Shown here: positions 8,991 to 22,912 of the stretch, piece by piece
Layout of the letters: each line of letters begins with the position of its first letter
Numbering within the stretch: the stretch's first letter is position 1
Virus record (IMG/VR): IMGVR_UViG_3300034104_005687
Coordinates: 1-64,000 of that record
Direction: 5' to 3' (one strand)
Length of the DNA stretch: 64,000 nucleotides
Made by a program: the position numbers and the translations under genes
The notes under the pieces: generated by a model
Told to the model about the DNA's origin: nothing
The model's input: the letters and a program-made list of their open reading frames with translations, nothing else
The model's database searches: none

Positions 8991-9320
8991 ATGGCAATAA
9001 CAACCAATTATCCAGACGAATACAAGCAATGGCAGCCTGAACGGGTTGAACTCATTGGAGACCGAGCTGTAAAGTTTCGTGACGTATGTGTACACGAGAT
9101 CCGCATGGGCGACGTAGAAGATCCGGATTTAATGGTTGCTGAACCAATTTGGAGGTGGCAAGAATCAGATGCTGGTAAGTTTATAATGGAGCATGCCAAG
9201 GATAAACCTTACTGGACTCGTAGCATAGATCCGCACACGTATGGACACATGTACCGCATCATAGCAAGATTAAGTGAGCAGGATCAAATCTTTTGGACAT
9301 TAAAGTGGGGTAACAAATGA
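8991..9320 (+). CDS. Hypothetical protein
   Basis: 109-aa ORF; ATGA overlap with the epimerase gene. Confidence 0.75.
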   Translation: MAITTNYPDEYKQWQPERVELIGDRAVKFRDVCVHEIRMGDVEDPDLMVAEPIWRWQESDAGKFIMEHAKDKPYWTRSIDPHTYGHMYRIIARLSEQDQIFWTLKWGNK

Positions 9321-10285
9321 AAATATTAGTAACAGGCGGACTAGGGTTAATTGGTCACAATGTAGTGCAAAGACTAGAAGCCCGAGATCACGAAGTGATC
9401 ATCACAGACACTCGTACCAACTACGGAATTATTCCACAAGCAGAACTTGATTACTTGATGGGCGAGCGGTTAAAGAAGATATCAGGCAACAACATCTATC
9501 ACATTGACATTACCAATGCCGAAGACTTTGACTGGTTGGTAGGCAAACACAAGCCCGAAGTAATCATTCACATGGCAAGTTTTCCCCGACAGAAAGTTGT
9601 CAATGCTAACCCTGCCTGGGGCAGTCGTGTTATGATGGAAGGGTTGATCAACGTTTGTGAGAGTGCCAAAAAGCACAATGTAGAACGTGTTGTGTACATA
9701 TCTAGTTCAATGGTGTATGGTGATTTTGAAGATCAAGTAGAAGAAGACTACGACTGCCGACCCATTGGACAATATGGCATCTTAAAATTAACTGGAGAAG
9801 ACCTTGTCAAAGACTACCATCGTCGCGGTGCTTTCGATTACGCTGTTATTAGGCCTAGTGCTGTATACGGGCCACTGGATGTGGAAGACAGGGTCGTTGC
9901 AAAATTTATGCTCGGAGCCATGCGAGGTAGCGTTCTCCGAGTTAATGGGGCAGGGGAGACGTTAGACTTTACCTATGTAGATGATGCCGCTGATGGTATT
10001 GTAGCAGCCGCTACTCGTATCATGGCTCGTAACAATACCTACAACATTACTAAATCGCATTCAGTTAGTTTGTTAGAAGCCGCAGAGATGATTGTGAAGA
10101 TTGTGGGCAAGGGTGAGATCGAAACTCGAGACAAAGATGCAGACTTTCCCAGTCGCGGTGCACTGAACATTGATCGTGCCAGGACCATACTAGGCTACGA
10201 TCCCAAAGTTGATGTAGAAGAAGGATTCCAAAAGTATTATGACTGGCTTTCGAATTCCGTTTACTGGTCTCCAAAGACAGTATAA
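9317..10285 (+). CDS. NAD-dependent NDP-sugar epimerase/dehydratase (extended SDR)
   Basis: TGGLGLIG Rossmann motif, YISSSMVYG, YGILK (YxxxK), RPSAVYGP, DFTYVDD. Confidence 0.92.
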   Translation: MKILVTGGLGLIGHNVVQRLEARDHEVIITDTRTNYGIIPQAELDYLMGERLKKISGNNIYHIDITNAEDFDWLVGKHKPEVIIHMASFPRQKVVNANPAWGSRVMMEGLINVCESAKKHNVERVVYISSSMVYGDFEDQVEEDYDCRPIGQYGILKLTGEDLVKDYHRRGAFDYAVIRPSAVYGPLDVEDRVVAKFMLGAMRGSVLRVNGAGETLDFTYVDDAADGIVAAATRIMARNNTYNITKSHSVSLLEAAEMIVKIVGKGEIETRDKDADFPSRGALNIDRARTILGYDPKVDVEEGFQKYYDWLSNSVYWSPKTV

Positions 10286-11342
10286 ACAACTCCGCGAGGA
10301 GATTCTAGACGCAACTGATCAGGTACTGCAATCAGGTCAGCTCATGAACGGCGCCTGGACTCAGAAGTTTGAAAACTGGCTGGCTGTTAGGAACGGTGGC
10401 AAAAATGCTGTGACTTGCCACTCGGGCACACAGGCCTTGGAAATTATAGCCGAATATTGGCGTGGACTAGAACTAACCAATAAGTCGCCAAGAGTGTTGA
10501 TCCCTAGCTTGACGTTTGTGGCCACGGCCAATGCGTTCTTGCGAGCTGGTTGGGACGTACACTTTGTAGACGTGGATGTCAACGGGTTGCTTGACCCTGA
10601 TAAAATCCCCCAAGACCTTGATTATCAAGCCATAGTGTTGGTTGGTTTGTATGGCGCTGCTATTTCCCACGCTCATTCTGTAAAGGCCTGGACACATTGG
10701 TTACACAACAATGTCACAGTGATTGAAGATGCTGCACAACATTGGTTAGGCAACAATAGCCAACGAGTCGGCGAAGGCAGCGCCATCAGTTTTGACCCCA
10801 TGAAGAACTTGGCCTGTTATGGCAACGGTGGTGCAGTGGTCACAGACAACCAGGATCTAGCAGACTTTGCACGAGCCTGGCGCAATCACAACAAAGGTGA
10901 CTACAAGGCCGAACGTGGTGGCAGCAACAGTCGCATGAGCGAACTGGATTGTGCACACATGATGGTCAAAACACAGTACATTGATCAATGGCAAGCTCGT
11001 CGTCGCCGGATTGCTGCCTACATGTGTGAACGATTTGCAAATACCAGCATACGCTGTTTGATCAACGAACACAATGAGCACAATCATGCGTTTCACAAGT
11101 TTGTGATTGATGTTGATCAGCGCAATCGACTGCAAGAGAAACTGTGGAACGCCAGTATTGACACACGAATACACTATGAGCAACCCTTGCACGATAACTC
11201 TGTGTTGAGACAATTCCCCGGGCCCAACATGATGAGTGTAGCCACTGCACTGAGCCAGCGTGTGTTGAGTTTGCCTATCTATCCTGAGTTGTCAGACTTA
11301 GATGTGGAATATGTCACTGATCAGGTGTTAAAGAACGTTTGA
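10239..11342 (+). CDS. DegT/DnrJ/EryC1/StrS PLP-dependent sugar aminotransferase
   Basis: HSGTQAL, TFVATANA, IEDAAQH, SFDPMKNL (catalytic Lys), GNGG, LSLPIYP. Confidence 0.93.
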   Translation: MTGFRIPFTGLQRQYKQLREEILDATDQVLQSGQLMNGAWTQKFENWLAVRNGGKNAVTCHSGTQALEIIAEYWRGLELTNKSPRVLIPSLTFVATANAFLRAGWDVHFVDVDVNGLLDPDKIPQDLDYQAIVLVGLYGAAISHAHSVKAWTHWLHNNVTVIEDAAQHWLGNNSQRVGEGSAISFDPMKNLACYGNGGAVVTDNQDLADFARAWRNHNKGDYKAERGGSNSRMSELDCAHMMVKTQYIDQWQARRRRIAAYMCERFANTSIRCLINEHNEHNHAFHKFVIDVDQRNRLQEKLWNASIDTRIHYEQPLHDNSVLRQFPGPNMMSVATALSQRVLSLPIYPELSDLDVEYVTDQVLKNV

Positions 11343-14300
11343 CAAACGCATAGCTTGCGAGCCAATCCCACTCGTAGCTCTTGCGGAGCTCAGTGGGATC
11401 ACCTTTGACCTCTTCATAGTACTCCACAGCATCCTGTGCGCCTTTATGACTCCAATGTCCATTGGCAATGGTGCCGGAGTCTTCTTTTAACCAGACATTG
11501 AGTCTGTATTCATTTTCCACGTTGGGTAAACTTGCACGTAGTTTAAGTGCTTCACGGAAAGCTGTGCGCCAGGCCATCCAAGGCGATTCAGCATAGTTGG
11601 CTGTGCCACTGAGAATAGGTACAACTTCGTGCGCCTGATCTAGCGTAAAGTCCAGGCCAACACCTGTGTTCTCCAACGCCAACTTCTTGTTGTAGGCAAT
11701 CATGGCTTGGTGACCATACACCAATCCATTGACAGGATTGCCAGCATGAAAGATATAGTGCTTGGGCTGTTGCATACGATCTGGCTGCCAGGTCCAATCA
11801 AACTTGGCGTCAACTTCTAACTTGGCAAACACAGCAAAGAACCAAGGTGTGGTACTGGCTCGTGCTGCCGCATGATAAGCTGCCACACGACCTTTTACTC
11901 CTGATACCATATGTACTTTGTTGGTATGTGATGAGTTGGCTAGATACATCTGCATTTGCAAATAATTAGATGCAGAATTGGGTTCGCCATTGCTGATAAA
12001 CACAATGTCCAGTGGCTGATCGCCATGACGTTTACGTTGTGTCTTGTCAATATGTGCATAATCGTACAGTTGCGTTTTAACATCACCTCGAGCTACTTTT
12101 GGCACAATCACTGCACTGGCACCTGTGCTCAACGGCACAATAGTTTTGACTTCTTGACGCCAAAGAGGAACGGTGGGCATTGTGATAGGCACACCATTTG
12201 TGGTGAACAATGCCAAGGGTCCGGCCCAATCTACATTCTTGACTGCATCCACATGCGAATCAGCAGTGTGTTCAATCACAGGCATGGATCTACGTGGTAC
12301 ACTCCGGCGGGATACATAGTTCACACTATACCATTCCAGCAAAGCTTTCTTTTCGGCACGTTCGGCAAAGGTAGGTACATGCATGTAGAATGTGTCCCCA
12401 AACTTTTGTTCATTGCTGGGGAATACATGCAACATTGTACTTTGCCAGATCTCTGGGTGCCATGAAAAGTCAAAGCCAGTGTAATCGCAAATTGAACTGC
12501 ATATCCACACATGCTCGTATTGCCCCACAAGGCTCCGGGCCAAACGTATTAGTGTATCTCTGTAGTTGTCAAAGTAACGTACTTTTTTAACTACATCTGG
12601 AATTTGCCCTGCGTTGCCATCCAGGTGATCAATTTCAAATATAGGTGCAGCTTCTTGCTTGACTTCTGCCCTCATCATGTCCACATACTTGAACTCAGTG
12701 GCACCAGGCATGCGATACTGCGGTCCTCCAGTCTTTTGATGCTGTGTGGCAAATTGATAGATGTAGGCTGGTTCGCCTGGGTCTGGCTGCCAACTGAAGT
12801 CCATATCAGTAGTGTTCACATATTCAGGAATGGTCCAATTGGTCATATTCGTCAACAAGTTAGCAACCGGTCCTGTCATGTACTTGCGCTCAGTGGCACT
12901 GGGCATGTGATATTCTACAGTGGGCATTTTCTCTGCTGGCCACCACTGGTTACCAAACACATAGATGTAGGGTGGTGATCCAGGTTCGGGTCTCCAGGTA
13001 TAATCCCATTCACAGTCTATGACGGTGTGCCAGTGATTATCGTGTTGAGGCAACAACTGTGCAGGGATATCCATGTACTTGAGTTCTGTAGCACCCAGCA
13101 TGTGATATTCTACAGTGGGCATTACTTCTGCTGAATAGTACTGATTACCAAACACATAGTTATAAGGTGGTGATCCTGGATCGGGTTCCCACGACCAATC
13201 AAAGCTCGCAGGATAGTGTTGTGTAAACCGTGTATGATCCCCACGACGTTGTGCTCGCGGATGATCCATGTATTTGATTTGTGTAGCACCTGTTACTGCA
13301 TACTGTAATGCGGGACGTTGTTCAGGCGTGAGCCACTGATTACCAAACACATACGTATAAGGAGGATCTGTGGGATTGGGCCGCCAGGAGTAATCAAACG
13401 ATTCAATGTCATCCAACAATTCCCAAGCAGCCACGTCTTGTGCTAGTGTAGCAACAATATCATCTACATACTTGATTTCAGTGCCGCCGGCATTGTACAC
13501 TACTGTGGGTTCTAGTACAGCCGAGTTCCATTGGTTACCGAACACATAGGTCATTGGTGGATCAAAAGGATTTGGTTCCCACGAATAGTCAAATTCACTG
13601 ACCGCTAGGTTATGTCCGAACAGGCGTGGTTGCGGCAGTCTGCGTGTGCGTCTATCCATGTACTTGACTTCGATGGCGCCCGGAACAACATACTTGACAC
13701 TGGCTTTGAACTCTGGCTGATTCCATTGATTACCGAACACGTAAATATAGGGTGGATCTTTAGGATTAGGAACCCAGGTCCAGTCCCACCTACTATTATC
13801 AACATCCTCGCATAACTCCCAGTTGGCCATGTTGTCACCTAGTTGAGCAACCACATTGTCAACAAATTTTTCCTGTGTTGCACCAGACATTTCGTAAACC
13901 ACAGTGGGCATTTCTATACCTGGCCAATGTTGATTGCCAAACACATAATTGTAAGGCGGTTCTGTATTGTCAGGATGCCAGGAGTAATCAAATCCTTGTA
14001 TAATTTCTAAATTCTTAAACAACTGTTTATTAGGTAATCTGCGATGCAATATTTCTACATACTTGCGTTCTACAGCACCAGGTACTACATAACAAGCACC
14101 GCCATTGGGTTGCCACTGAGTAGCAAATTCATATATGTAAGGGTTGTCTCCTGGATCAGGCCGCCAAGAATAATCCACGCTTAACGGATCAACATAATCT
14201 GGTACTTGCCAGTTGGTCTTGTCCGCAAGTATCCTGGCAGTCATGTCCATGTATTTGCGTTCAGTAGCACCGGTGACGTGATACTCAACTGTGGCCATTT

Positions 14301-15117
14301 TCTCTGCACTCCACCACTGATTACCAAACACGTAAATGTAAGGCGGATCTCCAGGATCTGGTTCCCAGGCCCAATCAAACTCACAAGGATACAAACAACA
14401 AAATTTACTTTTGTCTGGTAGTCGTTGTGTACGAATATTGTGCATGTACTTTTTTACAGTTGCACCGGGCACATGATACTCTACACTAGAACGAGATTCT
14501 GCTGGCCAATGTTGATTGCCAAACACATAAATCATTGGAGGATCAAATGGATTTGGGTGCCAGTTAAACACAGGATCATGTTCATCTACGTTATCATGTG
14601 TCTGCCAGTCTTTGCGATCCGACTGTGTACGAGCAACAAACACATCCATGTATTTGCGTTCTGTTGCTCCGGGCACACGGTATTCTGGGCCACCTACTCT
14701 ATCCCAATCCCATTCTACAGGAAACTCATATATGTACGGAGGATCTGTGGGATTAGGTGCCCATGTATAGTTTATACTAGCAGGATCAATCCATTTGGGT
14801 ATGTGCCAGTAGCTGATATCAGGCAGTCTGTGTACGGTGCGCTCGCTGTGATAATTTGTTTCAGTATATCCAGCTTTGGGAATAAGATAAACACCTGCAT
14901 CAATTTGATATTGATCTAACCATGCATGTCGCTGATGTGCTTGCCATGGTGGTGGCTCATAAAGCCAATCCCAGTCTGAGTAGTCTGCTAAGTAGTTTGC
15001 TATCCAAAAATACCTTGTGCGACTCAGTTGTTGCGCATGCTGAATAGATTCAACTGCTCGTTCATGAGCAAACAAATTGGGCTTGTGTCCCGATGCAAAA
15101 TAAAATACGTCAAACAT
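11314..15117 (-). CDS. 1267-aa protein: 11 tandem ~65-aa Trp/Pro/Tyr repeats plus C-terminal GT-A-like domain
   Basis: Repeat core (F/W)DxSWxPxPxDPPYxYVFGNQ...VxYxxPGATExKY. C-terminus DIVFISNGEP...VKGRVAAYHAAA...NPVNGLVYG...AWRTAFRE aligns by eye with 32501..33424. Confidence 0.8.
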   Translation of the reverse strand: MFDVFYFASGHKPNLFAHERAVESIQHAQQLSRTRYFWIANYLADYSDWDWLYEPPPWQAHQRHAWLDQYQIDAGVYLIPKAGYTETNYHSERTVHRLPDISYWHIPKWIDPASINYTWAPNPTDPPYIYEFPVEWDWDRVGGPEYRVPGATERKYMDVFVARTQSDRKDWQTHDNVDEHDPVFNWHPNPFDPPMIYVFGNQHWPAESRSSVEYHVPGATVKKYMHNIRTQRLPDKSKFCCLYPCEFDWAWEPDPGDPPYIYVFGNQWWSAEKMATVEYHVTGATERKYMDMTARILADKTNWQVPDYVDPLSVDYSWRPDPGDNPYIYEFATQWQPNGGACYVVPGAVERKYVEILHRRLPNKQLFKNLEIIQGFDYSWHPDNTEPPYNYVFGNQHWPGIEMPTVVYEMSGATQEKFVDNVVAQLGDNMANWELCEDVDNSRWDWTWVPNPKDPPYIYVFGNQWNQPEFKASVKYVVPGAIEVKYMDRRTRRLPQPRLFGHNLAVSEFDYSWEPNPFDPPMTYVFGNQWNSAVLEPTVVYNAGGTEIKYVDDIVATLAQDVAAWELLDDIESFDYSWRPNPTDPPYTYVFGNQWLTPEQRPALQYAVTGATQIKYMDHPRAQRRGDHTRFTQHYPASFDWSWEPDPGSPPYNYVFGNQYYSAEVMPTVEYHMLGATELKYMDIPAQLLPQHDNHWHTVIDCEWDYTWRPEPGSPPYIYVFGNQWWPAEKMPTVEYHMPSATERKYMTGPVANLLTNMTNWTIPEYVNTTDMDFSWQPDPGEPAYIYQFATQHQKTGGPQYRMPGATEFKYVDMMRAEVKQEAAPIFEIDHLDGNAGQIPDVVKKVRYFDNYRDTLIRLARSLVGQYEHVWICSSICDYTGFDFSWHPEIWQSTMLHVFPSNEQKFGDTFYMHVPTFAERAEKKALLEWYSVNYVSRRSVPRRSMPVIEHTADSHVDAVKNVDWAGPLALFTTNGVPITMPTVPLWRQEVKTIVPLSTGASAVIVPKVARGDVKTQLYDYAHIDKTQRKRHGDQPLDIVFISNGEPNSASNYLQMQMYLANSSHTNKVHMVSGVKGRVAAYHAAARASTTPWFFAVFAKLEVDAKFDWTWQPDRMQQPKHYIFHAGNPVNGLVYGHQAMIAYNKKLALENTGVGLDFTLDQAHEVVPILSGTANYAESPWMAWRTAFREALKLRASLPNVENEYRLNVWLKEDSGTIANGHWSHKGAQDAVEYYEEVKGDPTELRKSYEWDWLASYAFVKRSLTPDQ
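12670..14830 (-). repeat. Coding tandem repeat array, 11 units of ~65 aa (~195 nt)
   Basis: 11 WxPx(P/N)x(D/E/S)(P/N)(P/A) cores counted in the translation; boundaries approximate. Confidence 0.85.
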
Positions 15118-16246
15118 GCTTAGAATAGATGAAATTTACAACAATACATTTTGGCCTTGGTTAAAAGCCAACCGCCCAGGCTTTAGGGCTTTCTTCTGCG
15201 AACCATTTGGCAGAAGTGATGCAGACAGCGTTATGAACTACGGTAGAGATGATGTACACGAACACAATTATATATTCTTTTTTGACCAAGAGCCAATACA
15301 TTTGAACATACACACAAATACTTTTTTCAAAGTGCACGACTATAATTTAGATATCACACATGACCGATCGTTGTCAAAAAAACAGCATGAATATAAAGTC
15401 CAAGACGCTGGGTATCTGCTTACCAGCGAGTACAACAGTGAGAACGTAGATCTAGTGTGCAAAAAGTTTGAATGGAAACCATTGTACTACTTTTTTCACG
15501 GATGGGCAGCACTGGATTGGTATCGAGGATACGACAAGACATTTTTGATTACGCCCCTTGCACAACGACAGATCACAAAAACATTTATTGCGCCCAATCG
15601 TATTGTGGCTGGAGAACGAAAACACAGACTGGAAATGCTGTACCACATATTCAAAAACAACATGACCAACAATCATGTCAGTTGCCCTGCTGTGTGTCCA
15701 GCTGAAAACATTTCTATACTGGAAGCTGTCAAACCATTGATCACAAAGTACACTGACATTGAATCAGTATTTACTGCACAGTCTTTGCCTATTAACTTTG
15801 AGGGAGAAACTGACCATCCCATGCATAGCTGCTGGCTTAGTTTGTTTGATCAGTGTGCAGAAAGCTTGCTGTATTTGGTGACAGAAACTGTGGCCACTGG
15901 TCGTAGACATCACTTAACAGAAAAAACTTTCAAGCCCATTGCCCTGGGCATGCCTTTTGTGATTGTGGGCACACGCGGAAGTTTGGAATACTTACGTAGC
16001 TATGGGTTCCGCACGTTCGAAGGCATATGGGACGAAAGCTATGATGACGCAGAAGACGATGTGCGTATCCAACGCATTGCCAGTTTGTTGCGTAGCCTTG
16101 ATGAGCTATCGCCAGAGGGCAAACAAGACCTGTTTGTTCAGTGCCAAGAAGTAATTGAACACAACTGGAATCACTTCTATGGTGGCGGCTTTGAAGCTGT
16201 GCTGTGGAAAGAACTCAATGAGATGCTGAATGAAATTGAACTTTAA
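15116..16246 (+). CDS. Putative GT10-like glycosyltransferase, TEK-x-FKP family (paralog 2)
   Basis: LYLVTETVATGRRHHLTEKTFKPIALGMPF...GFRTFEGIWDESYD. Confidence 0.55.
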   Translation: MLRIDEIYNNTFWPWLKANRPGFRAFFCEPFGRSDADSVMNYGRDDVHEHNYIFFFDQEPIHLNIHTNTFFKVHDYNLDITHDRSLSKKQHEYKVQDAGYLLTSEYNSENVDLVCKKFEWKPLYYFFHGWAALDWYRGYDKTFLITPLAQRQITKTFIAPNRIVAGERKHRLEMLYHIFKNNMTNNHVSCPAVCPAENISILEAVKPLITKYTDIESVFTAQSLPINFEGETDHPMHSCWLSLFDQCAESLLYLVTETVATGRRHHLTEKTFKPIALGMPFVIVGTRGSLEYLRSYGFRTFEGIWDESYDDAEDDVRIQRIASLLRSLDELSPEGKQDLFVQCQEVIEHNWNHFYGGGFEAVLWKELNEMLNEIEL

Positions 16247-17420
16247 CTTTGTAGCTGATCAAGTGCTCAAGGGCAGAATATACCCTGCACTTGCACAGCA
16301 TCAGGCAAGACCATACACACAGTCCTGGCGAGAGTTTGGTAAACATTTTCCCTATACTATCCCGTTACGACTGCAGGAATACTGCAATCAACACGGGGTT
16401 GATATCAACATATACAATATACACGACTCTTATCCTGACAACACCTTTTACCCTGTGGGAATAGGATTTTTTGATTTTGGCATAGATTACTTTACTTTGC
16501 TGCCCACAGCAGTATTTCAGGCAGTGTACTACGGCAAAATTCGGGTGTTGTTTTACTATCACGAAGGCGACAATCCGCGGCGTATCAAACAACGGCTAGA
16601 TACCCTGGCTGCACAATTGAAATTGCCGCCTGACTGTTATGTGTTTGTGAGTTCCAACAGTGCTGCTGAACACATACCAGGGTTTGTGGTGTTCAATGAT
16701 TTTGAATTATGGTATTATCAGCGCAACATAGAAACTGATCCATTGCCAGTGCACAGTGATCATCGTACCAAAGAATTTACATGTCTCAGCAGACTGCACA
16801 AGTGGTGGCGAGCCACTGTCATGGCAGATTTGCATCGCAGCGGCATGTTAGATAACAGCTATTGGAGCTACTGTGAATCAGCCACAGGGGCCGACACTGA
16901 CTGCCCAATAGAAGTTGATATGATTGCACGGCTAAGACATGATCGCACAAAATTTCTCAAAGATGCTCCCTATTTCAGTGACGAACTATCTGACAGCGAT
17001 CGTAACAATCACGCTGTAATGGAACCCAAATACTACGCAGACAGTTATTGTCAGATTGTGTTGGAAAGTCAATTTGACGTGGATCAAAGCGGCGGTGCGT
17101 TTGTGACTGAAAAAACTTTCAAGCCCATCAAACACGGTCAGTTGTTTTTTGTAGCAGGTGGTGTAGGCAGTCTTCAAGTACTGCGAGATCTGGGTTATAG
17201 AACATTTGATCACTTGTTGGACAACAGCTATGACACCATAACCAATCATACTCAACGATGGAAACAACTACAACAAAGTATTACAGCAGCTCAACCCAGA
17301 TTGCCTGAGTTATTTGCTGCGGCTCGGGAAGATATAGAACACAACCAACAATTATTTGTGGCCAACAAGAGCCAACGCCTAAATAGCTTACTTGAGAAAA
17401 TAAATGAACAACACCGTTAA
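16230..17420 (+). CDS. Putative GT10-like glycosyltransferase, TEK-x-FKP family (paralog 3)
   Basis: CQIVLESQF...FVTEKTFKPIKHGQLF...GYRTFDHLLDNSYD. Confidence 0.55.
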   Translation: MKLNFNFVADQVLKGRIYPALAQHQARPYTQSWREFGKHFPYTIPLRLQEYCNQHGVDINIYNIHDSYPDNTFYPVGIGFFDFGIDYFTLLPTAVFQAVYYGKIRVLFYYHEGDNPRRIKQRLDTLAAQLKLPPDCYVFVSSNSAAEHIPGFVVFNDFELWYYQRNIETDPLPVHSDHRTKEFTCLSRLHKWWRATVMADLHRSGMLDNSYWSYCESATGADTDCPIEVDMIARLRHDRTKFLKDAPYFSDELSDSDRNNHAVMEPKYYADSYCQIVLESQFDVDQSGGAFVTEKTFKPIKHGQLFFVAGGVGSLQVLRDLGYRTFDHLLDNSYDTITNHTQRWKQLQQSITAAQPRLPELFAAAREDIEHNQQLFVANKSQRLNSLLEKINEQHR

Positions 17421-18432
17421 TTCCTACACATCATGGCAACCACTAGAAGAAGTCATTGTGGGCCGTGCCTACACACCAGACTATTTTGACTTCATTGACA
17501 ATCCACAGGTGCGCAATCAGTTGCAGCAAATCCTAGCTGAGACAGAAGAAGATCTTGACAATCTTTGCCGCACCATCGAACGGTACGGTGCCACTGTACA
17601 TCGACCAGACTTGCCTGGCAAGGACAACTTTGTTTGGCATCAAACCGAAGGAGGAGGTGCTCCGCTGCCGCCATTGACACCTCGCGATTGGCAGATTACG
17701 CTGGGCAACAAATTGTTACGTGTGCTCAACATGGAAGAGCTAGACACAATTTGCAGTAGGTACGGCGATCAAGTGGTCAACCCTCACACCAGTCGGTGGG
17801 ATTCGGATTGCATTCTCAATGGTGCCAGTGCTAGTTGCATTGTACGTGTGGGTCGAGATGTGTTCTTTGACAACTCAGACTTCCTACGACCCGATCAAAC
17901 TCGTTGGATTGTGGACAATGTGTTGGGTCCCGAATATCGCATACACGAAGCAGTCACAGACGGACACGGTGATGCTGTCTTTGCCATTCTTAAACCTGGT
18001 GTAATTCTCAGCAGCAAACACGACGTGAATCTAGATCTTGGCAGAGATTTCCCAGGATGGGATGTGTGCAAGATTTGGGACAGTTCAATCTGGGCAGCAA
18101 TGGAAGTGGGCAAGTTCAAATACGAGCAAAGCCCTGGTGCATGGTATGTACAAGGTCAAACTCCTACACTAGAGTTTACCAAGTTTGTGGACACTTACTT
18201 GAACAAGTGGACTGGCTTTGTGGCCGAAACAGTGTTTGATGTCAACTGTCTTGTGCTAGATGAACAAAATGTGATCTTCAGTGCCTACAACAAAGAAGTG
18301 TTTGACTACTGTAAAAAGCATCGTATCAATCCCATTATCTCAGAATTGCGACACAGCTACTTCTGGGACGGCGGCATCAGTTGCTGTACACAGGATATTC
18401 GACGACGTGGTGGGCTTGAAAATTACTTATAA
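17404..18432 (+). CDS. Amidinotransferase (glycine / inosamine-phosphate amidinotransferase family, pentein fold)
   Basis: VNSYTSWQPLEEVIVG, TPRD; apparent triad Asp (NSDF), His (HGDAV), Cys (DGGISCCT); FDVNCLV. Confidence 0.85.
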   Translation: MNNTVNSYTSWQPLEEVIVGRAYTPDYFDFIDNPQVRNQLQQILAETEEDLDNLCRTIERYGATVHRPDLPGKDNFVWHQTEGGGAPLPPLTPRDWQITLGNKLLRVLNMEELDTICSRYGDQVVNPHTSRWDSDCILNGASASCIVRVGRDVFFDNSDFLRPDQTRWIVDNVLGPEYRIHEAVTDGHGDAVFAILKPGVILSSKHDVNLDLGRDFPGWDVCKIWDSSIWAAMEVGKFKYEQSPGAWYVQGQTPTLEFTKFVDTYLNKWTGFVAETVFDVNCLVLDEQNVIFSAYNKEVFDYCKKHRINPIISELRHSYFWDGGISCCTQDIRRRGGLENYL

Positions 18433-19002
18433 CTTGGTATATTCGCCCAAGGTAATGTAACAACAAATTCGTTGCACTGATTCAGGAACCTCACGTTCCA
18501 TATCGTGCCATAATAATTTTTTAACACCGCCACATGTGTGAGAATTAAACATCAGGTATCCGGTGTTTGTAACACTGGGGAATCGATGCACAACATCACT
18601 GTCTGAATTGGTGTTGAAAAATGTTGTACCTATCGTGGTATCATTGTTGGGCAAAAGGTATATTTGCATAGCCGATGGCAGTGTACCATCACAGTGCATA
18701 CCAGGTCTAAAGCCGGGTTCGTCTATCCACCAGCTCAGACTCCAGTACTTTTCATCTACAAACCTTACTCCACATGCTTGTTCAATTTGTGGACGTAGAG
18801 TTTTGCGTGCATAATCTTCCACATCGAAGAAAAACGGTAGGTCAGGTCCGCAAAACATCTTGCGCTTGCTTCTTCCTATCTCCAATCGTTGATATGACAT
18901 TGTGTTCCAGGAACATGATATTATCTGTGACAAAATATTGCTAGGAAATACCTCTGCAACAGAGTACAAATAGCCACAAGAATCAACTGATTGAATCAAC
19001 AT
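18427..19002 (-). CDS. 2OG-Fe(II) oxygenase-like protein
   Basis: HCD (HxD), MQIYL, GTTF, GYLMFN, distal WH and R. Likely start at the TAATG overlap (19002; ORF track 19011). Confidence 0.65.
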   Translation of the reverse strand: MLIQSVDSCGYLYSVAEVFPSNILSQIISCSWNTMSYQRLEIGRSKRKMFCGPDLPFFFDVEDYARKTLRPQIEQACGVRFVDEKYWSLSWWIDEPGFRPGMHCDGTLPSAMQIYLLPNNDTTIGTTFFNTNSDSDVVHRFPSVTNTGYLMFNSHTCGGVKKLLWHDMEREVPESVQRICCYITLGEYTKL

Positions 19003-20489
19003 TAGCTGCAAACCTTTACACCATACAACGTTTCAAATCTGTCTGCGTCTTTGCGATCGTTGACCATAGGTTCCCCACGTATGTTAAGGCTAGTGTTTAA
19101 CAACATCGGACACCCAGTCATTACATACCACTTTTCCAGTAGCTGTCTTATACCGGATCCGTCATTGGGTACAGTCTGTACACGACTAGTGCCGTCAGCA
19201 TGAATGATAGCAGGAAATAGGTCAGGATGCCTGCAACGAGCGATGACTTGCATATACCTACTGTTACCGAAGCCACGAGGCATATCAAAGTACATATCAG
19301 CCAGTTCCTCCAAAATAACCGGCGCAAAGGGTCTAAATTGTTGTCTACGTTTGATTCCATTTACTTGATTCTTTATATCAGGGCCGCGAGGATCGGCCAA
19401 CAAACTACGATTTCCTAGTGCTCGTGGACCAAACTCAGCACGGCCGCTGGCAACACCAACGATGCGAGAGGACACAAGCTCGTCTAGAATCTCATTCACA
19501 GGGTAGGCACCGCCAATATTGTGACCCAGAAAAGCATTGTGCCAATTGATCCTACCGCCATGAGCCAATGCGGCAGCACCCAGACTGCTGCCGGCATCAC
19601 CGGGACAAGGCATAATCCAAATGTTGTCAAATAGTTCACCTAGCCTCCTGTTGGCACTACAGTTTAGCGCAACTCCACCTGCGTACACAAGATTGCGACT
19701 CCACCCAAATCCTTTGGCACGAGCCATCACATTCATGATTAGGTCCTCCACAAGATCCTGGGCACCTGCTGCAATATCTACATCGCCTATGTGACTGAGA
19801 TATTTGTGAGTTAGTCCTGTGTGCAAGTTATCACGAAAACGAACTTTCCAGGCATCCTCCACAAGATCCTGCTTCATAAGTTCACCAAAGCCACGTTCGC
19901 CATAAGCGGCCATGCCCATTAGTATGTATTCTTCGTCTAGTGGGCGTAGGCCAACGCGGCCAGTAGCTGCAGAGTAGAAGAGTCCAATTGAATGCGGGTA
20001 CCGTTGACTCCAAAGTTTGCGATAAGTTGCTTGATTGTTTCGATCATATTCAGCTGCCCATATTGTTACAGTATCAAATTCACCAATAGCATCTATTACA
20101 ACTACAGTGGCACGATCAAACGGGCTGGTTTGAAAACCTCCGGCTGCATGGCTTTGATGATGATTGTGCGTGCTGATGTGTGCCGGCAGTTGAATTTTGT
20201 GGTCAAGTTGATCATTGATGATTTGCCGAGCACTCAATTTGTTCCATTCTATGCCCTGGCCTGAATACAGTTGTCTCAATTGTTTTAGCCACGGTCGTTC
20301 ATAGTATGCAACATGATCAATGGCACCGCCATGTGCTATTGCGTCTTGAATCAATTCAAGACACAGATTTTCGTCATTTTTTTTCTTGCTGTAGCGTTCA
20401 CTGTGGCCAGCAAAAAGAATATCGCCCTGCGGAGATATTACTGTGGCTGCTGCATCATGAAAGCCGGCTGCTATTCCCAGTATGTTCAT
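19002..20489 (-). CDS. O-carbamoyltransferase (NodU/CmcH/TobZ family)
   Basis: HHQSHAA, VIDAIGE, GGVALNC, GDAGSSLGAA, EFGPRALGNRS, FRPFAP, DGTSRVQTV, LNTSLN. Confidence 0.93.
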   Translation of the reverse strand: MNILGIAAGFHDAAATVISPQGDILFAGHSERYSKKKNDENLCLELIQDAIAHGGAIDHVAYYERPWLKQLRQLYSGQGIEWNKLSARQIINDQLDHKIQLPAHISTHNHHQSHAAGGFQTSPFDRATVVVIDAIGEFDTVTIWAAEYDRNNQATYRKLWSQRYPHSIGLFYSAATGRVGLRPLDEEYILMGMAAYGERGFGELMKQDLVEDAWKVRFRDNLHTGLTHKYLSHIGDVDIAAGAQDLVEDLIMNVMARAKGFGWSRNLVYAGGVALNCSANRRLGELFDNIWIMPCPGDAGSSLGAAALAHGGRINWHNAFLGHNIGGAYPVNEILDELVSSRIVGVASGRAEFGPRALGNRSLLADPRGPDIKNQVNGIKRRQQFRPFAPVILEELADMYFDMPRGFGNSRYMQVIARCRHPDLFPAIIHADGTSRVQTVPNDGSGIRQLLEKWYVMTGCPMLLNTSLNIRGEPMVNDRKDADRFETLYGVKVCS

Positions 20490-20587
20490 TTGTAGATAAA
20501 TGGATCTCGTTTGCGGAGCTCTTTGAGCTTTTTACGATAACGAATTTCCAGGGTGATTCGTGCCCATAATCTCTTGATCCAGTTCAT
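20486..20587 (-). CDS. 33-aa basic peptide MNWIKRLWARITLEIRYRKKLKELRKRDPFIYK
   Basis: Translated by hand; ATGA overlaps at both ends fill the gap exactly. Confidence 0.7.
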   Translation of the reverse strand: MNWIKRLWARITLEIRYRKKLKELRKRDPFIYK

Positions 20588-21627
20588 TTCAATTCCTTTA
20601 TTTGCTGTTCAGCATAGTCTGGATCGCTCCAGTTGTATGTGTATGTAGCTGAAATATTGCCAATTTGAATTTTATACACATCCAGGTGTTGAGCCAGCTG
20701 TGCCCAAATTTGTTCATAGTCTGTGGTACCAAAACTCTTGATCAAATTGACCTGAGCCACTTTGGGATGCCCTATGGTCAAACTTTTGTCTTCGGGGTCA
20801 AATCCGTTTTGTGTTAGCCAGGTTCTGAACTCTGCCAGTTGTTTTTGTTGCCAATAGTACGCACCCGGATCACGTGCCCATTCAATATCAAAGTCCCCAG
20901 CGGCTTGTGTTTGTGCTCGCAGTGAAGTTGTGGTCAACTCGCTGAGCCGCGAATCTCGACCTTCGTCGTTGAACACTTCCCAATGTGCTTTGCCCACAGC
21001 TTTGTTGACTCCCACATACACTCCGCCTAACTGTCGATTAATTGTTTCAATGCCAAACAGTTCGTAGTCTTCGGGCCCTAATTCAAATCGGGGTGCTCGC
21101 AGCCAACACATCAATTGACTGGGACGACGCCACTCAGGTGCTTGAATCACTTTACGCATGCTGAGCACCAGGCTTTCCAGTTCATGACACAAGAGATTTA
21201 GTTGTCGAATGTGCCAGCGAGTAACATCATCTGCTGCGGTATAGTACGGACTCATGGCTCCTGACACACCTTGTAGATCTTCAAAGTAGCGGTGCAACCA
21301 ATTCATGCGTTCATGATTGATGTCTAGGTCTGACTGTATCACTGATTCCACATTGTAATCAGGGCACACAATGTGATAGCCTAGGTTGGCTTGATTCACG
21401 GCTGTGATGCTGCGATTGATCTCTCCACAAATGTATTCAGCTGTGCGTTCGCTCTCAGTCCACCCCAGCCAACAGTAGTTCTTTTCCAAATGATATTGAT
21501 TCTGCACTAGATGCTGCAAGGCGGCGTGCCATTTACGTCCAAGACTGGTGTCAGGAACATCAATATACACTGGCAAAGTGCTGCCGGTGCGTGAGCTGCG
21601 TAATGTTATTGTGATTTGGTCAAGCAA
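20584..21627 (-). CDS. Hypothetical protein (LHRYFE / CHELE motifs)
   Basis: 347-aa ORF coupled to neighbours by overlaps. Confidence 0.8.
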   Translation of the reverse strand: MLDQITITLRSSRTGSTLPVYIDVPDTSLGRKWHAALQHLVQNQYHLEKNYCWLGWTESERTAEYICGEINRSITAVNQANLGYHIVCPDYNVESVIQSDLDINHERMNWLHRYFEDLQGVSGAMSPYYTAADDVTRWHIRQLNLLCHELESLVLSMRKVIQAPEWRRPSQLMCWLRAPRFELGPEDYELFGIETINRQLGGVYVGVNKAVGKAHWEVFNDEGRDSRLSELTTTSLRAQTQAAGDFDIEWARDPGAYYWQQKQLAEFRTWLTQNGFDPEDKSLTIGHPKVAQVNLIKSFGTTDYEQIWAQLAQHLDVYKIQIGNISATYTYNWSDPDYAEQQIKELK

Positions 21628-22912
21628 TTTGATCCCACCATTTCTTTATTTCAGGTCTCGCACTCAATATTGTGGCCATGTCTGTGGGCGCTGTGCGAAT
21701 ACTTTCTAATTTTAACACACGAGCCTTGCCTTGAGCAAGAGCAGACTGATAAGTGTCAGGCCATTGTTGTTCAAAAGTAGGTCTTGATTTTAACTGCGTT
21801 AGCACATCTCTCATGCTGGTTGCTGTGCATTTTGCAATCAATTCATCCAACCAAGGGTCCAGCAAATGTCGTGGCAAGGCCAAAGGACTCATCACAATGT
21901 CTGGAGAAAAGCTGAACATTACCTTGCTCAACAATTCTACATCATACTGCTGTGCCAATGCCTGTATGGCATCTACTTCAAACATACCTGGTAGAGTAAG
22001 TGTAAAGTCCAGTCTCATTTGTCTACGGTTTTGTTGATGTTGGCGTCCTGCTTCGAAGTTTCTGCAGAAAATATTGTAGTCGAGGCCTGTTCTAATGTAT
22101 TCACCAATTGCTCCAGTGCCGTCAATGCTTGCGCAAATTTGCCAATCTTGTATATGATCCAAAATATCGCTGTAAAGATTGCACCCGCGATAATCAATTC
22201 TGCTAAGGTTAGTGTTGTATCTAGCGTAAACATTTTTTCCATCCCCTAGTTCCACAATTCTTTTCATGTAGCGCCAATGCTGTTCATACATTAGAGGTTC
22301 GCCGCCAACCCAGTATATTTCTTCTACTCGGTGTTGCTCTACAGCATCACTGAATTCTTGTTCAATCTGCTGATCTTGAAACTGCGAGATTTGTTGTCGT
22401 ACACTGGGAGTCATCCAGTTGTTTTTAGAATTTGCCCAATCAACCATGTTGTGAGTTTTTTGTTCTGTTTCCCAGGATGACGACAACATGTCTCCGCAAG
22501 TTCTACACTTAAAGTTACATAGGTTACTGAACCTATAATCCCAGCTAACAGGTTGCATTGTGGTGGCTCCACTGGCATCAGTTGTGGCATATACTTCTGA
22601 TATTTTGTGCCCAAACAGATGACCAAAGTAGTCTCTGTACACGCTGGTGTTTAACAATTTTGAATTACAAACATCGCACTCGGGTAATGTTTCGCCGGCC
22701 ATCATTCGTCGACGTACACTCCGCATGTGTTCGCTGTTCCAGTGTTGCTCCAGTGTGGCAGGAATATACTGACCTGTGCCTGAACTAGTATCTATATATT
22801 GTTCAAAGTTCTGTGCAGGTTCACGACTAGCGCAACACAATCGTCGTTCAGTTTGCGGGCTAAGATATGTGTGAGTCCAAGGTGCAAGACAAAGAGTATC
22901 AGGTTTTTTCAT
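21620..22912 (-). CDS. Radical SAM protein with N-terminal Twitch/SPASM-like Cys motifs (rSAM 1)
   Basis: CLAPW...RLCC...CDVC, then NLCNFKCRTC (CxxxCxxC) and VGGEP. Confidence 0.92.
   Translation of the reverse strand: MKKPDTLCLAPWTHTYLSPQTERRLCCASREPAQNFEQYIDTSSGTGQYIPATLEQHWNSEHMRSVRRRMMAGETLPECDVCNSKLLNTSVYRDYFGHLFGHKISEVYATTDASGATTMQPVSWDYRFSNLCNFKCRTCGDMLSSSWETEQKTHNMVDWANSKNNWMTPSVRQQISQFQDQQIEQEFSDAVEQHRVEEIYWVGGEPLMYEQHWRYMKRIVELGDGKNVYARYNTNLSRIDYRGCNLYSDILDHIQDWQICASIDGTGAIGEYIRTGLDYNIFCRNFEAGRQHQQNRRQMRLDFTLTLPGMFEVDAIQALAQQYDVELLSKVMFSFSPDIVMSPLALPRHLLDPWLDELIAKCTATSMRDVLTQLKSRPTFEQQWPDTYQSALAQGKARVLKLESIRTAPTDMATILSARPEIKKWWDQIA

What the first reader, a model, noticed from the sequence alone, without database searches (positions are those of the whole stretch)
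9317..18432. Possible route to a guanidino-sugar: dehydratase/epimerase + aminotransferase + amidinotransferase
The SDR and DegT genes are an overlapping pair, the usual route to an amino NDP-sugar (established). An amidinotransferase with an apparently intact Asp/His/Cys triad is coupled to two GT10-like genes (seen). Family members transfer amidino groups from Arg to glycine or to aminocyclitols (established). Transfer to an amino sugar would give a guanidinylated, cationic glycan, which I do not recall from any phage (inference).
Basis: partly seen in the sequence, partly recalled or inferred. Interest (0 to 1): 0.68.

Follow-up and report, generated by a model that had tools for sequence, protein, structure and literature searches.

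The report
Phage amidinotransferase in a glycan/radical-SAM island
A widespread lake jumbo phage carries a very conserved but atypical arginine-type amidinotransferase inside a large sugar-modifying gene island; it may make a guanidino-decorated glycan, but its most constant partners elsewhere are radical SAM enzymes, not the sugar aminotransferase.

Summary
The genes exist as described. The window holds an epimerase-type SDR, then a DegT aminotransferase. It also holds two paralogous GT-B glycosyltransferase genes that overlap into a 342-aa amidinotransferase homologue (AGAT E 3e-17; profile 4.5e-28).

Three details are wrong or incomplete:
- The SDR lacks the 4,6-dehydratase signature, and the genome encodes no dehydratase.
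- The triad Asp (AGAT D254) is Ser142. Cys327, His188, Asp95 and Asp190 are intact, and an Asp at position 279 co-varies with loss of Asp142 (109 of 110 homologues).
- The 1267-aa ORF between the gene pairs is a third glycosyltransferase (GT-A domain plus about 11 repeats).

The locus belongs to a ~23-kb island, conserved in 52 related contigs from lake metagenomes. The island also holds a NodU-type carbamoyltransferase, five N-terminal-twitch radical SAM paralogues and two more GT-B paralogues.

The amidinotransferase is the most conserved island gene (median 86% identity). In 10 of 11 distant loci its homologues sit among the same radical SAM family, with no SDR, DegT or carbamoyltransferase homologue found.

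A carbohydrate-borne amine is therefore the leading acceptor in this phage (confidence about 0.4). The proposed SDR-to-DegT-to-amidinotransferase route is not specifically supported. No function has been published for any of these phage genes.

The parts
9317..10285 (+). SDR1: extended-SDR NDP-sugar 4-epimerase-like enzyme, not a 4,6-dehydratase
   Evidence: Pfam Epimerase 6.7e-43. Best solved relative is UDP-GlcA 4-epimerase 6zl6, 3.6e-27. Motifs 'SSSMVYGD' and 'YGILK'. Scores 114 bits against the 365-bit cut-off of the dTDP-glucose dehydratase model. Present in 52/52 related loci at median 74% identity.
10239..11342 (+). DegT/DnrJ/EryC1/StrS-family PLP sugar aminotransferase
   Evidence: PF01041 6.3e-67. 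Best solved relatives are 7b0d, then the sugar aminotransferases QdtB, DesV and WbpE. PLP lysine motif 'SFDPMKN'. Present in 51/52 loci at median 55% identity.
11314..15117 (-). 1267-aa protein: about 11 tandem ~65-aa Trp/Pro-rich repeats (about nt 12649-14787) plus a C-terminal GT-A glycosyltransferase domain (about nt 11587-12021). It is transcribed divergently from P0001.
   Evidence: Repeats read directly from the sequence. AF2 model of aa 830-1267 has pLDDT 79.8. VIA matches: B4GALNT1 Z 11.9 (rmsd 2.9, 141 aa), CHSY3 Z 11.4, WrtF Z 10.7, SpsA Z 10.1, PBCV-1 A64R Z 9.8. Foldseek matches HddC, WrtF and ArnC at E about 1e-4 to 9e-4. Present in 44/52 loci.
15116..16246 (+). P0001: GT-B-fold glycosyltransferase-like protein of an unnamed family (motif LTEKTFKPI)
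   Evidence: Paralogue of P0002 over the C-terminal ~110 aa (38% identity, 1e-15). Matches the family HMM at 2.6e-63. No Pfam, NCBIfam or PHROG hit. Present in 52/52 loci at median 50% identity.
16230..17420 (+). P0002: GT-B-fold glycosyltransferase-like protein (motif VTEKTFKPI)
   Evidence: AF2 model pLDDT 78.6, pTM 0.82. VIA matches: T4 BGT Z 12.5, alpha1,3-FucT 5zoi Z 11.8, FUT9 Z 10.4. Foldseek matches SenB, Asp1 and glycogen synthase at about 1e-4. The family has 9191 representatives and none of 43 sampled members hits a Pfam GT family. A viral protein cluster fuses this fold to an SDR epimerase domain.
17404..18432 (+). P0003: divergent amidinotransferase homologue. Cys327, His188, Asp95 and Asp190 are present. 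Ser142 replaces the triad Asp, and Asp279 is the candidate substitute.
   Evidence: similarity to AGAT, HsvA, StrB1, SxtG; residues; 52/52 loci, median 86% identity, the most conserved island gene; 3789 relatives.
18427..19011 (-). Variable 194-aa ORF of unknown function
   Evidence: No family hit. Homologue found in only 3/52 loci.
19002..20489 (-). NodU/NolO/TobZ-type carbamoyltransferase
   Evidence: Pfam Carbam_trans_N 1e-38 and Carbam_trans_C 4.6e-46. phrog_1601 7.7e-91. Present in 52/52 loci at median 69% identity.
20584..21627 (-). Conserved 347-aa protein of unknown function
   Evidence: No family hit. Present in 52/52 loci at median 67% identity.
21620..22912 (-). N-terminal-twitch radical SAM paralogue 1
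   Evidence: NCBIfam NF033640, 285 bits against a 170-bit cut-off.
22899..23864 (-). GDP-mannose 3,5-epimerase homologue; an accessory gene, not found in most relatives
   Evidence: 8.4e-89 to 8sg0 and 2c59. Motif 'SSSACIYP'. In the related loci the only matches are ~22% identity matches, which in L086 fall on the SDR1 gene, and L001/L002 lack it.
24463..25467 (-). Third island copy of the P0001/P0002 GT-B family
   Evidence: Family HMM 2e-28. Cross-matches to the GT genes.
25448..26659 (-). N-terminal-twitch radical SAM paralogue 2
   Evidence: NF033640, 336 bits.
26656..27915 (-). N-terminal-twitch radical SAM paralogue 3
   Evidence: NF033640, 389 bits.
27912..29252 (-). N-terminal-twitch radical SAM paralogue 4
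   Evidence: NF033640, 277 bits.
29239..30501 (-). Fourth island copy of the P0001/P0002 GT-B family
   Evidence: Family HMM 1.4e-49.
30329..31831 (-). N-terminal-twitch radical SAM paralogue 5
   Evidence: NF033640, 305 bits.

Best explanation
The window begins a 349-kb lake-water jumbo phage genome. Coordinates 9.3-31.8 kb form a cytoplasmic glycan-tailoring island with no membrane proteins.

Shown:
- The island encodes two epimerase-type SDRs, one DegT aminotransferase, five glycosyltransferase-fold proteins (one GT-A, four GT-B), one sugar-type carbamoyltransferase and five N-terminal-twitch radical SAM paralogues.
- It encodes one amidinotransferase homologue, whose gene is overlapped by the two GT-B genes upstream of it.

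Inferred mechanism:
- Host nucleotide sugars are epimerised.
- A keto group is generated, probably by a BtrN-like radical SAM dehydrogenase, because no dehydratase is encoded.
- DegT installs a primary amine.
- P0003 takes the amidino group of L-arginine onto Cys327 as a covalent intermediate. Asp95 and Asp190 hold the guanidinium, His188 acts as acid/base, and Asp279 replaces the lost Asp142.
- P0003 then passes the amidino group to that sugar-borne amine, giving a guanidino sugar.
- The carbamoyltransferase adds a carbamoyl group.
- The glycosyltransferases assemble and attach the glycan. The likely target is a phage macromolecule such as a virion protein, because the baseplate and tail module follows directly on the same strand.

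The acceptor and the target are inference only.
For: - Family assignment and retained catalytic Cys, His and the two guanidino-binding Asp.
- Strong constraint: median 86% identity, highest in the island.
- 17-nt overlaps P0001/P0002/P0003, read from the coordinates and kept in relatives.
- Glycan enzymes all around.
- Nine GT-B paralogues genome-wide.
- A GT-B/SDR fusion in other phages.
- No hydrophobic segments in island proteins.
- No ThyA-like hydroxymethylase or C5-methyltransferase; a TET/JBP search also found nothing but is uninformative.
- Operons of oxidoreductase + DegT + amidinotransferase in archaeal MAGs.
- Amidinotransferase genes embedded among glycosyltransferases in S-SCSM2R and beside two GT-A-like genes in CP220.
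- The twitch domain of the radical SAM paralogues matches that of BtrN, an aminocyclitol dehydrogenase.
- StrB1, which amidinates an aminocyclitol phosphate, is a family precedent (established knowledge).
- Baseplate genes are adjacent.
Against: - In 10 of 11 distant loci carrying homologues, the neighbours are 1-7 N-twitch radical SAM genes. Four of these loci also carry an Asp/Arg-hydroxylase domain. No SDR, DegT or carbamoyltransferase homologue was found there, and only one GT-B copy, in L115. The conserved partnership is therefore with radical SAM chemistry, not with DegT.
- The DegT-linked homologues (archaea, S-SCSM2R ORF309) are of the canonical Asp142 type, unlike P0003.
- The triad Asp is absent and AGAT Arg322 and Ser355 are replaced by Val208 and Asp279. 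Donor, acceptor, and even transferase versus hydrolase chemistry are therefore uncertain.
- No keto-sugar-forming enzyme, nucleotidyltransferase or GFO oxidoreductase is encoded.
- No expression or chemical data exist; no RNA run holds the locus.
Confidence: 0.4

Rival explanations
1. P0003 works with the N-twitch radical SAM array on a peptide or protein, in a RiPP-like or virion-protein maturation pathway. It might convert Lys or Orn side chains to homoarginine or arginine. The sugar genes would act separately, or glycosylate the same protein.
For: - The amidinotransferase plus N-twitch radical SAM pairing is the only association kept across distant loci.
- L116-L118 and L120 add Asp/Arg-hydroxylase domains.
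- L117 also has an M16/PqqF-like peptidase, methyltransferases and small ORFs, and looks bacterial.
- The nearest solved relatives of the radical SAM core include the peptide maturases SkfB, anSME and YydG.
- Loss of the AGAT residues recalled as binding the alpha-carboxylate fits a substrate without a free carboxylate.
Against: - No member of this family is known to act on peptidyl amines (own knowledge).
- No precursor peptide or RiPP recognition element was identified.
- Viperin, BtrN, BlsE and MoaA, which act on nucleotides or sugars, match the radical SAM profile about as well as the peptide maturases.
- In this clade the gene is overlapped by glycosyltransferase genes, not by radical SAM genes.
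Confidence: 0.22
2. P0003 makes a free small molecule from host arginine, as an auxiliary metabolic or antibiotic-like function. Candidates are guanidinoacetate, homoarginine, an amidino-polyamine as made by HsvA, or an aminocyclitol/aminoglycoside-like compound of streptidine or bluensidine logic.
For: - All characterised family members act on small molecules (AGAT, StrB1, HsvA, SxtG).
- HsvA ranks above StrB1 in the profile search.
- Another jumbo-phage clade has its homologue near an Orn/Arg decarboxylase and an aminotransferase fragment (L115).
- The set DegT + twitch radical SAM + amidinotransferase + carbamoyltransferase + glycosyltransferases resembles aminocyclitol pathways such as BtrN/BtrS, StrB1 and TobZ (own knowledge).
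- The authors of PMC12801897 suggested antibiotic synthesis for the cyanophage genes.
Against: - Asp279 and Val208 at the positions of AGAT Ser355 and Arg322 argue against glycine-type acceptors.
- No cyclitol synthase, kinase, phosphatase or exporter was recognised in the island.
- Nine GT-B paralogues and a 1267-aa repeat/GT-A protein suggest a polymer or a macromolecular target.
Confidence: 0.18
3. The island hypermodifies phage DNA, with glycosylated and guanidinylated bases. The GT-B proteins would act like the T4 glucosyltransferases.
For: - T4 beta-glucosyltransferase is the top structural match of P0002 (Z 12.5), and T4 alpha-glucosyltransferase scores Z 10.4.
- ThyX lies just upstream at 8278-8970.
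- ThyX, a carbamoyltransferase fragment and an amidinotransferase also co-occur on the distant contig L094.
Against: - No ThyA-like hydroxymethylase or C5-methyltransferase in a genome estimated 97% complete. The TET/JBP search also found nothing, but its control rang in no genome, so it is uninformative.
- The Z scores of T4 BGT and the fucosyltransferases are tied.
- ThyX is an ordinary thymidylate synthase.
Confidence: 0.08
4. P0003 is not a transferase. It would be a hydrolase of the same superfamily (arginine or agmatine deiminase, or DDAH-like), or a non-catalytic protein.
For: - The triad Asp is missing.
- No Pfam or NCBIfam amidinotransferase model is matched.
- Some sources label distant homologues as DDAH.
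- One cyanophage homologue was found in the virion proteome (PMC12801897).
Against: - Only amidinotransferases, and no deiminase or DDAH, appear among solved structures, even with a profile at E up to 0.01.
- Cys, His and both guanidino-binding Asp are invariant in 146-147 of 147 homologues, and Asp279 co-varies with loss of Asp142. This argues for an active site that was remodelled, not lost.
Confidence: 0.12

Closest known systems
L-arginine:glycine amidinotransferase (AGAT/GATM; PDB 1jdw)
   Same: Best solved relative (3.1e-17; profile 4.5e-28). Full-length alignment including the C-terminal 'GGxxC.T.D.RRRG...YL'. Cys, His and both guanidino-binding Asp are conserved.
   Different: About 25% identity and about 40 residues shorter than the crystallised AGAT chains (385-386 aa). 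AGAT D254 is Ser142, S355 is Asp279 and R322 is Val208. There is a 3-residue deletion before the catalytic His. P0003 has 'SCC' where AGAT has 'HCW'. The genomic context is a phage glycan/radical SAM island, not creatine synthesis.
StrB1, scyllo-inosamine-4-phosphate amidinotransferase of streptomycin biosynthesis (PDB 1bwd)
   Same: Same family and similar length (348 vs 342 aa; 6.3e-12, profile 1.5e-22). It provides the precedent for a carbohydrate-like (aminocyclitol) acceptor made by a DegT/StrS-type aminotransferase.
   Different: No closer to P0003 than AGAT or HsvA. Sequences annotated as inosamine-phosphate amidinotransferase keep Asp at position 142. No inositol dehydrogenase, kinase or phosphatase is present here.
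HsvA (polyamine amidinotransferase of Erwinia amylovora, PDB 5wpi) and SxtG (saxitoxin pathway, PDB 6u1r)
   Same: Same family. Profile E-values are 1.3e-24 and 3.8e-21. Both show that the family accepts amines lacking a carboxylate.
   Different: HsvA, whose alignment was printed, keeps the FDAAD triad motif; the SxtG alignment was not shown. Both sit in toxin or virulence small-molecule contexts.
Putative amidinotransferases of Campylobacter phages CP220/CPt10 and cyanophage S-SCSM2R
   Same: Phage-borne homologues clustered with radical SAM genes and glycosyltransferases. CP220 has 5 radical SAM genes and 2 GT-A-like genes (PMC2853527). S-SCSM2R ORF309 sits among 5 glycosyltransferases, a DegT-like gene and a radical SAM gene (PMC12801897). 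No function has been shown for any of them.
   Different: Only 22-30% identical to P0003. CP220 gp086 and ORF309 keep Asp142, while ORF266 does not. Their radical SAM genes are not of the N-twitch family by phmmer.
GT10 alpha1,3-fucosyltransferases (compared with P0001/P0002)
   Same: GT-B fold. 5zoi, FUT9, FUT13 and FUT11 are among the best structural matches (Z 9.8-11.8). There is a C-terminal motif resembling the GT10 'TEK' nucleotide-sugar motif. A GDP-mannose 3,5-epimerase that would make a fucose-like GDP-L-sugar lies in the island.
   Different: No PF00852 match in P0001, P0002 or 41 sampled relatives. T4 beta-glucosyltransferase and exostosins score equally well. The protein-atlas feature score was only 0.79-0.80.

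Membership tests
Amidinotransferase family (AGAT/StrB1/HsvA/SxtG; pentein or guanidino-group-modifying superfamily) | Significant full-length sequence similarity to characterised members | tested here: met
   phmmer 3.1e-17 to 4.2e-10. Profile 4.5e-28 to 3.8e-21, with no other superfamily branch listed.
Amidinotransferase family | Catalytic Cys nucleophile (AGAT C407) | tested here: met
   Cys327 aligns with C407 and is invariant in 147/147 homologues.
Amidinotransferase family | Catalytic His (AGAT H303) and the two guanidino-binding Asp (AGAT D170, D305) | tested here: met
   His188, Asp95 and Asp190 align with them. They are present in 147, 146 and 147 of 147 homologues.
Amidinotransferase family | Triad Asp in the FDAAD motif (AGAT D254) | tested here: not met
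   Ser142 is invariant in the 18 aligned clade members. It aligns with the D of AGAT and HsvA. In 109 of 110 non-Asp142 homologues an Asp occupies position 279.
Amidinotransferase family | Match to the curated family models (Pfam PF02274, NCBIfam) | tested here: not met
   No Pfam hit even at E up to 10, and no NCBIfam hit.
Amidinotransferase family | Transfer of the amidino group from L-arginine to an amine, with release of ornithine | not testable with these tools
   Needs an enzyme assay.
GT10 fucosyltransferases (P0001, P0002) | Match to PF00852 Glyco_transf_10 | tested here: not met
   No hit for P0001, P0002 or 41 sampled relatives.
GT10 fucosyltransferases (P0001, P0002) | GT-B fold with GT10 as the distinctly best structural match | tested here: inconclusive
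   GT-B fold is supported. GT10 entries score Z 9.8-11.8, tied with T4 BGT at 12.5 and exostosins at 11.1-11.5.
NDP-sugar 4,6-dehydratases (SDR1) | Catalytic Asp/Glu after the active-site Thr (TDE or TSE), and reaching the equivalog score | tested here: not met
   The sequence reads 'SSSMVYGD'. It scores 114.5 bits against a cut-off of 365. The best solved relative is a 4-epimerase.
DegT/DnrJ/EryC1/StrS sugar aminotransferases | Full-length PF01041 match and the PLP-binding Lys | tested here: met
   226.8 bits over profile positions 2-359 of 360. The Lys of 'SFDPMKN' aligns with 'SFYPTKN' of 7b0d.
N-terminal-twitch radical SAM proteins (NCBIfam NF033640) | Score above the curated cut-off, the CxxxCxxC motif, and an N-terminal Cys-rich twitch domain | tested here: met
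   Five ORFs score 277-389 bits against a cut-off of 170. C139, C143 and C146 and the N-terminal Cys residues are invariant. The N-terminus matches the BtrN twitch domain at 1.4e-5.
NodU/CmcH/TobZ O-carbamoyltransferases | Both the Carbam_trans_N and Carbam_trans_C domains | tested here: met
   1e-38 and 4.6e-46. phrog_1601 7.7e-91.

The most novel reading that the evidence does not exclude
The amidinotransferase and its N-terminal-twitch radical SAM partners form an uncharacterised biosynthetic module found in bacteria and several phage lineages. In these lake jumbo phages the module has been joined to glycosyltransferases, an aminotransferase and a carbamoyltransferase. Together they would build a guanidinylated, carbamoylated (cationic) glycan on the virion or another phage target. 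To my knowledge (from memory and two paper searches) this would be the first guanidino-sugar glycan, the first amidino transfer to a carbohydrate outside aminocyclitol antibiotics, and an amidinotransferase active site with a relocated acidic residue.
Probability: 0.3. Interest if true: 0.8.

Novelty: new variant of a known kind. Interest (0 to 1): 0.62.

Why it matters
- Phage glycan and nucleotide-sugar islands are mostly unexplored. This one is abundant: 3789 protein relatives, and near-identical DNA in 20 runs, 19 of them labelled lake water.
- Its best-conserved gene is an enzyme type never given a role in a phage.
- If the product is a guanidino- and carbamoyl-decorated glycan, it would be new carbohydrate chemistry. 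Possible roles are virion charge, adsorption or evasion of host defences.
- It would also give a first function to the puzzling multi-radical-SAM clusters noted in Campylobacter and marine T4-like phages since 2010.
- Even if the acceptor is not a sugar, three things remain unstudied leads. One is the amidinotransferase/N-twitch radical SAM module. Another is the Asp142-to-Asp279 active-site swap. The third is a GT-B family with more than 9000 cluster representatives and no Pfam model.

Tried and rejected
- **Family scans.** Pfam, NCBIfam and PHROG scans of P0001-P0003 gave nothing usable. PDB sequence searches of P0001 and P0002 gave only chance hits.
- **Phage DNA search.** Megablast of the locus against phage records found no match.
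- **DNA hypermodification.** No ThyA-like hydroxymethylase, TET/JBP or C5-methyltransferase was found. The TET control matched no genome, so that blank is weak.
- **Keto-sugar and activation enzymes.** The only further SDR, near 311.4 kb, is GalE-like. No nucleotidyltransferase or GFO oxidoreductase is encoded.
- **Tree with characterised enzymes.** Only annotated actinobacterial homologues could be included.
- **Tree method.** The IQ-TREE run did not finish, so a FastTree tree was used. It is affected by long branches.
- **Structure.** No structure of P0003 was predicted. Model coordinates are not readable with these tools, so the question of which acid pairs with His188 could not be answered that way. 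The two fold jobs went to the unassigned proteins.
- **Reads and complexes.** No RNA run holds the locus. Complex prediction was not used because no protein-protein binding is claimed.
- **Literature.** Searches for guanidino sugars in glycans and for N-terminal-twitch radical SAM functions found nothing relevant.

Full report
**What is there.** The window is the first 64 kb of a single 349,369-bp virus record estimated 97% complete.

- The plus strand carries ThyX (8278-8970), a small ORF, an extended-SDR gene (9317-10285) and a DegT-family aminotransferase (10239-11342).
- A 1267-aa ORF lies on the minus strand (11314-15117). Its start codon abuts that of P0001.
- Three overlapping plus-strand genes follow: P0001 (15116-16246), P0002 (16230-17420) and P0003 (17404-18432). 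Each junction overlaps by 17 nt.
- The finding's coordinates and gene calls are therefore correct.
- The same order recurs in related contigs of up to 364 kb.
- Near-identical DNA of the P0001-P0003 stretch is held by 20 runs from 20 studies, 19 of them labelled lake water. None is on record as RNA.

**The amidinotransferase.**

- P0003 matches no Pfam or NCBIfam model.
- It aligns end to end with every solved amidinotransferase: AGAT 3.1e-17, StrB1 6.3e-12, HsvA 2.2e-10, SxtG 4.2e-10. With a small profile the range is 4.5e-28 to 3.8e-21. No deiminase or DDAH appears.
- Cys327, His188, Asp95 and Asp190 align with AGAT C407, H303, D170 and D305.
- The Asp of the Cys-His-Asp triad (AGAT D254, the first D of 'FDAAD') aligns with Ser142. 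Ser142 is invariant in the 18 aligned clade members.
- In 147 homologues, Cys327, His188 and Asp190 never vary and Asp95 varies once.
- Position 142 is not Asp in 110 of the 147. In 109 of those 110, position 279 (AGAT S355) is Asp.
- This state is clustered on a FastTree tree: 8 changes against 33 for shuffled labels.
- I read this as a remodelled but live active site, with Asp279 the candidate replacement acid. That reading is inference, because model coordinates could not be inspected.
- AGAT Arg322 corresponds to Val208. From memory, Arg322 and Ser355 bind the substrate carboxylate in AGAT, so a glycine-type acceptor seems unlikely.

**The sugar genes.**

- SDR1 has the Rossmann motif, a Ser and YxxxK. 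It reads 'SSSMVYGD' where 4,6-dehydratases have TDE and decarboxylases have TSE.
- Its best solved relative is a UDP-glucuronate 4-epimerase (3.6e-27). It falls far below the dehydratase equivalog cut-off.
- The genome's other SDRs are a GDP-mannose 3,5-epimerase (22899-23864, 8.4e-89) and a GalE-like enzyme near 311.4 kb.
- No nucleotidyltransferase or GFO oxidoreductase is encoded.
- DegT is intact, with its PLP lysine. After 7b0d, its nearest solved relatives are the sugar aminotransferases QdtB, DesV and WbpE, which I recall as C-3 aminotransferases.
- The 'usual dehydratase plus aminotransferase route' is therefore not what is encoded. The keto-sugar source is open.

**The glycosyltransferases.**

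- P0001 and P0002 share a C-terminal ~110 aa (38% identity) with the motif (L/V)TEKTFKPI.
- The P0002 model (pLDDT 78.6) has a GT-B fold. T4 beta-glucosyltransferase scores Z 12.5, alpha1,3-fucosyltransferase Z 11.8, and FUT9, FUT13 and FUT11 Z 9.8-10.4.
- Foldseek agrees on GT-B.
- The family is very large: 9191 cluster representatives at E up to 0.001. It has no Pfam model.
- The genome holds nine copies, four of them in the island.
- Other phages fuse this fold to an SDR epimerase domain.
- The 1267-aa protein has about 11 tandem ~65-aa Trp/Pro-rich repeats. It ends in a GT-A domain: B4GALNT1 Z 11.9 with rmsd 2.9 over 141 residues, also WrtF, SpsA and PBCV-1 A64R.

**The wider island.**

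- Downstream on the minus strand lie a NodU/TobZ-type carbamoyltransferase (19002-20489) and a conserved unknown gene.
- There are also five paralogues of the NCBIfam family 'twitch domain-containing radical SAM protein'. They score 277-389 bits against a cut-off of 170. Two more GT-B copies are interleaved with them.
- No island protein has a hydrophobic segment typical of a membrane span.
- The baseplate and tail module follows directly, including a 4900-aa virion protein.
- Across 52 full-length related loci the amidinotransferase is the most conserved island gene, at median 86% identity. The figures for the others are SDR1 74, radical SAM 72-76, carbamoyltransferase 69, GT-B 50-58 and DegT 55.

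**Comparative context.**

- Canonical (Asp142) homologues in DPANN and Methanosarcinales MAG contigs lie in operons with a GFO/IDH/MocA oxidoreductase and a DegT aminotransferase. A Tmk-like kinase and NUDIX hydrolases are also present. This is the oxidise-transaminate-amidinate logic of streptidine synthesis.
- Cyanophage S-SCSM2R ORF309 sits in a run of five glycosyltransferases, a DegT-like gene and a radical SAM gene. CP220 gp086 sits with five radical SAM genes and two GT-A-like genes (PMC2853527).
- These cases support a carbohydrate context for the family in phages.
- The non-Asp142 type, to which P0003 belongs, tells a different story. In 10 of 11 distant loci (L089-L092, L115-L120) the gene is flanked by 1-7 paralogues of the same N-twitch radical SAM family.
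- Four of those loci also carry an Asp/Arg-hydroxylase domain, and L117 looks bacterial. No SDR1, DegT or carbamoyltransferase homologue was found in them, and only one GT-B copy, in L115.
- The radical SAM profile matches the BtrN twitch domain at its N-terminus. Its core matches SkfB, viperin and BlsE about equally. That does not decide between sugar or nucleotide chemistry and peptide chemistry.

**Interpretation.**

- The most economical reading for this phage is that P0003 amidinates an amine on the product of the surrounding glycan machinery.
- The radical SAM enzymes, rather than a dehydratase, would supply the oxidation that DegT needs.
- I give this about 0.4.
- The main rivals are a peptide or protein substrate shared with the radical SAM array (0.22), a free small molecule (0.18), hydrolase or non-catalytic behaviour (0.12) and DNA hypermodification (0.08).
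- The DNA rival is weakened by the absence of a ThyA-like hydroxymethylase and a C5-methyltransferase. The TET/JBP search is uninformative because its control matched no genome.

**Novelty.**

- Amidinotransferase genes in phages have been noted before, but only as annotations (PMC2853527; PMC12801897).
- Marine T4-like genomes with 12 radical SAM genes are likewise unexplained (PMC5332604).
- Paper searches found no report of a guanidino-sugar glycan or of a function for these clusters.
- The finding is therefore a divergent variant of a known enzyme family in an uncharacterised, abundant phage island. It is interesting and testable, but the proposed product is not established.

Noticed in passing
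window 21620-31831 (-), also G000 137609-139890, 150267-151520, 221592-222722: Five tandemly arranged paralogues of the N-terminal-twitch radical SAM family (NF033640) lie in the island, with four weaker relatives elsewhere in the genome. The same family flanks amidinotransferase homologues in 10 of 11 distant loci.
   Followed up: partly
window 11314-15117 (-): A 1267-aa protein has about 11 tandem ~65-aa repeats (motif W.P.P.DPPYIYVFGNQW...V.Y.V.GAT..KYMD) and a C-terminal GT-A glycosyltransferase domain. The role of the repeats is unknown.
   Followed up: partly
window 22899-23864 (-): A close homologue of plant/algal GDP-mannose 3,5-epimerase (8.4e-89) is encoded by a phage. L001/L002 lack it, and the other related loci give only ~22% identity matches (in L086 on the SDR1 gene).
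   Followed up: partly
window 550-1716, 15116-17420, 24463-25467, 29239-30501; G000 297043-298101, 312901-313917, 324721-325677, 328364-329539: Nine paralogues of one GT-B-fold family occur in a single genome. The family has more than 9000 cluster representatives in public data and no Pfam model.
   Followed up: partly
window 39206-53908 (-): A 4900-aa virion structural protein (phrog_10938) is followed by a 1246-aa baseplate wedge protein and baseplate hub proteins, immediately after the island on the same strand.
   Followed up: no
window 2068-3150 (+) and 4743-6023 (+): A MoxR-type AAA ATPase lies next to a DUF2201 metallopeptidase/VWA protein. This pair has no obvious phage role.
   Followed up: no
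L086 (NZ_JBBAKG010000003.1, 148 kb): The whole island, with the amidinotransferase at 83% identity, lies on a contig binned as a Haliscomenobacter sp. MAG. This is either a mis-binned phage contig or a hint at the host.
   Followed up: no
L111:2408-3010 (G000 about 312.3 kb): A 200-aa ORF resembles the N-terminal half of DegT-type aminotransferases. It sits beside a GalE-like SDR and a GT-B paralogue, and is similar in size to the 'AHBA synthase' ORF305 of cyanophage S-SCSM2R.
   Followed up: no
L115 (346-kb contig, another jumbo-phage clade): An amidinotransferase homologue lies near an Orn/Arg decarboxylase, an aminotransferase fragment, three N-twitch radical SAM genes, a GT-B paralogue and ClpP.
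   Followed up: no
L094 (Rhodospirillaceae-labelled MAG contig): A distant amidinotransferase (37% identity, apparently split) lies on the same contig as ThyX, which is directly followed by a fragmented NodU-type carbamoyltransferase. This echoes the window's gene set.
   Followed up: no
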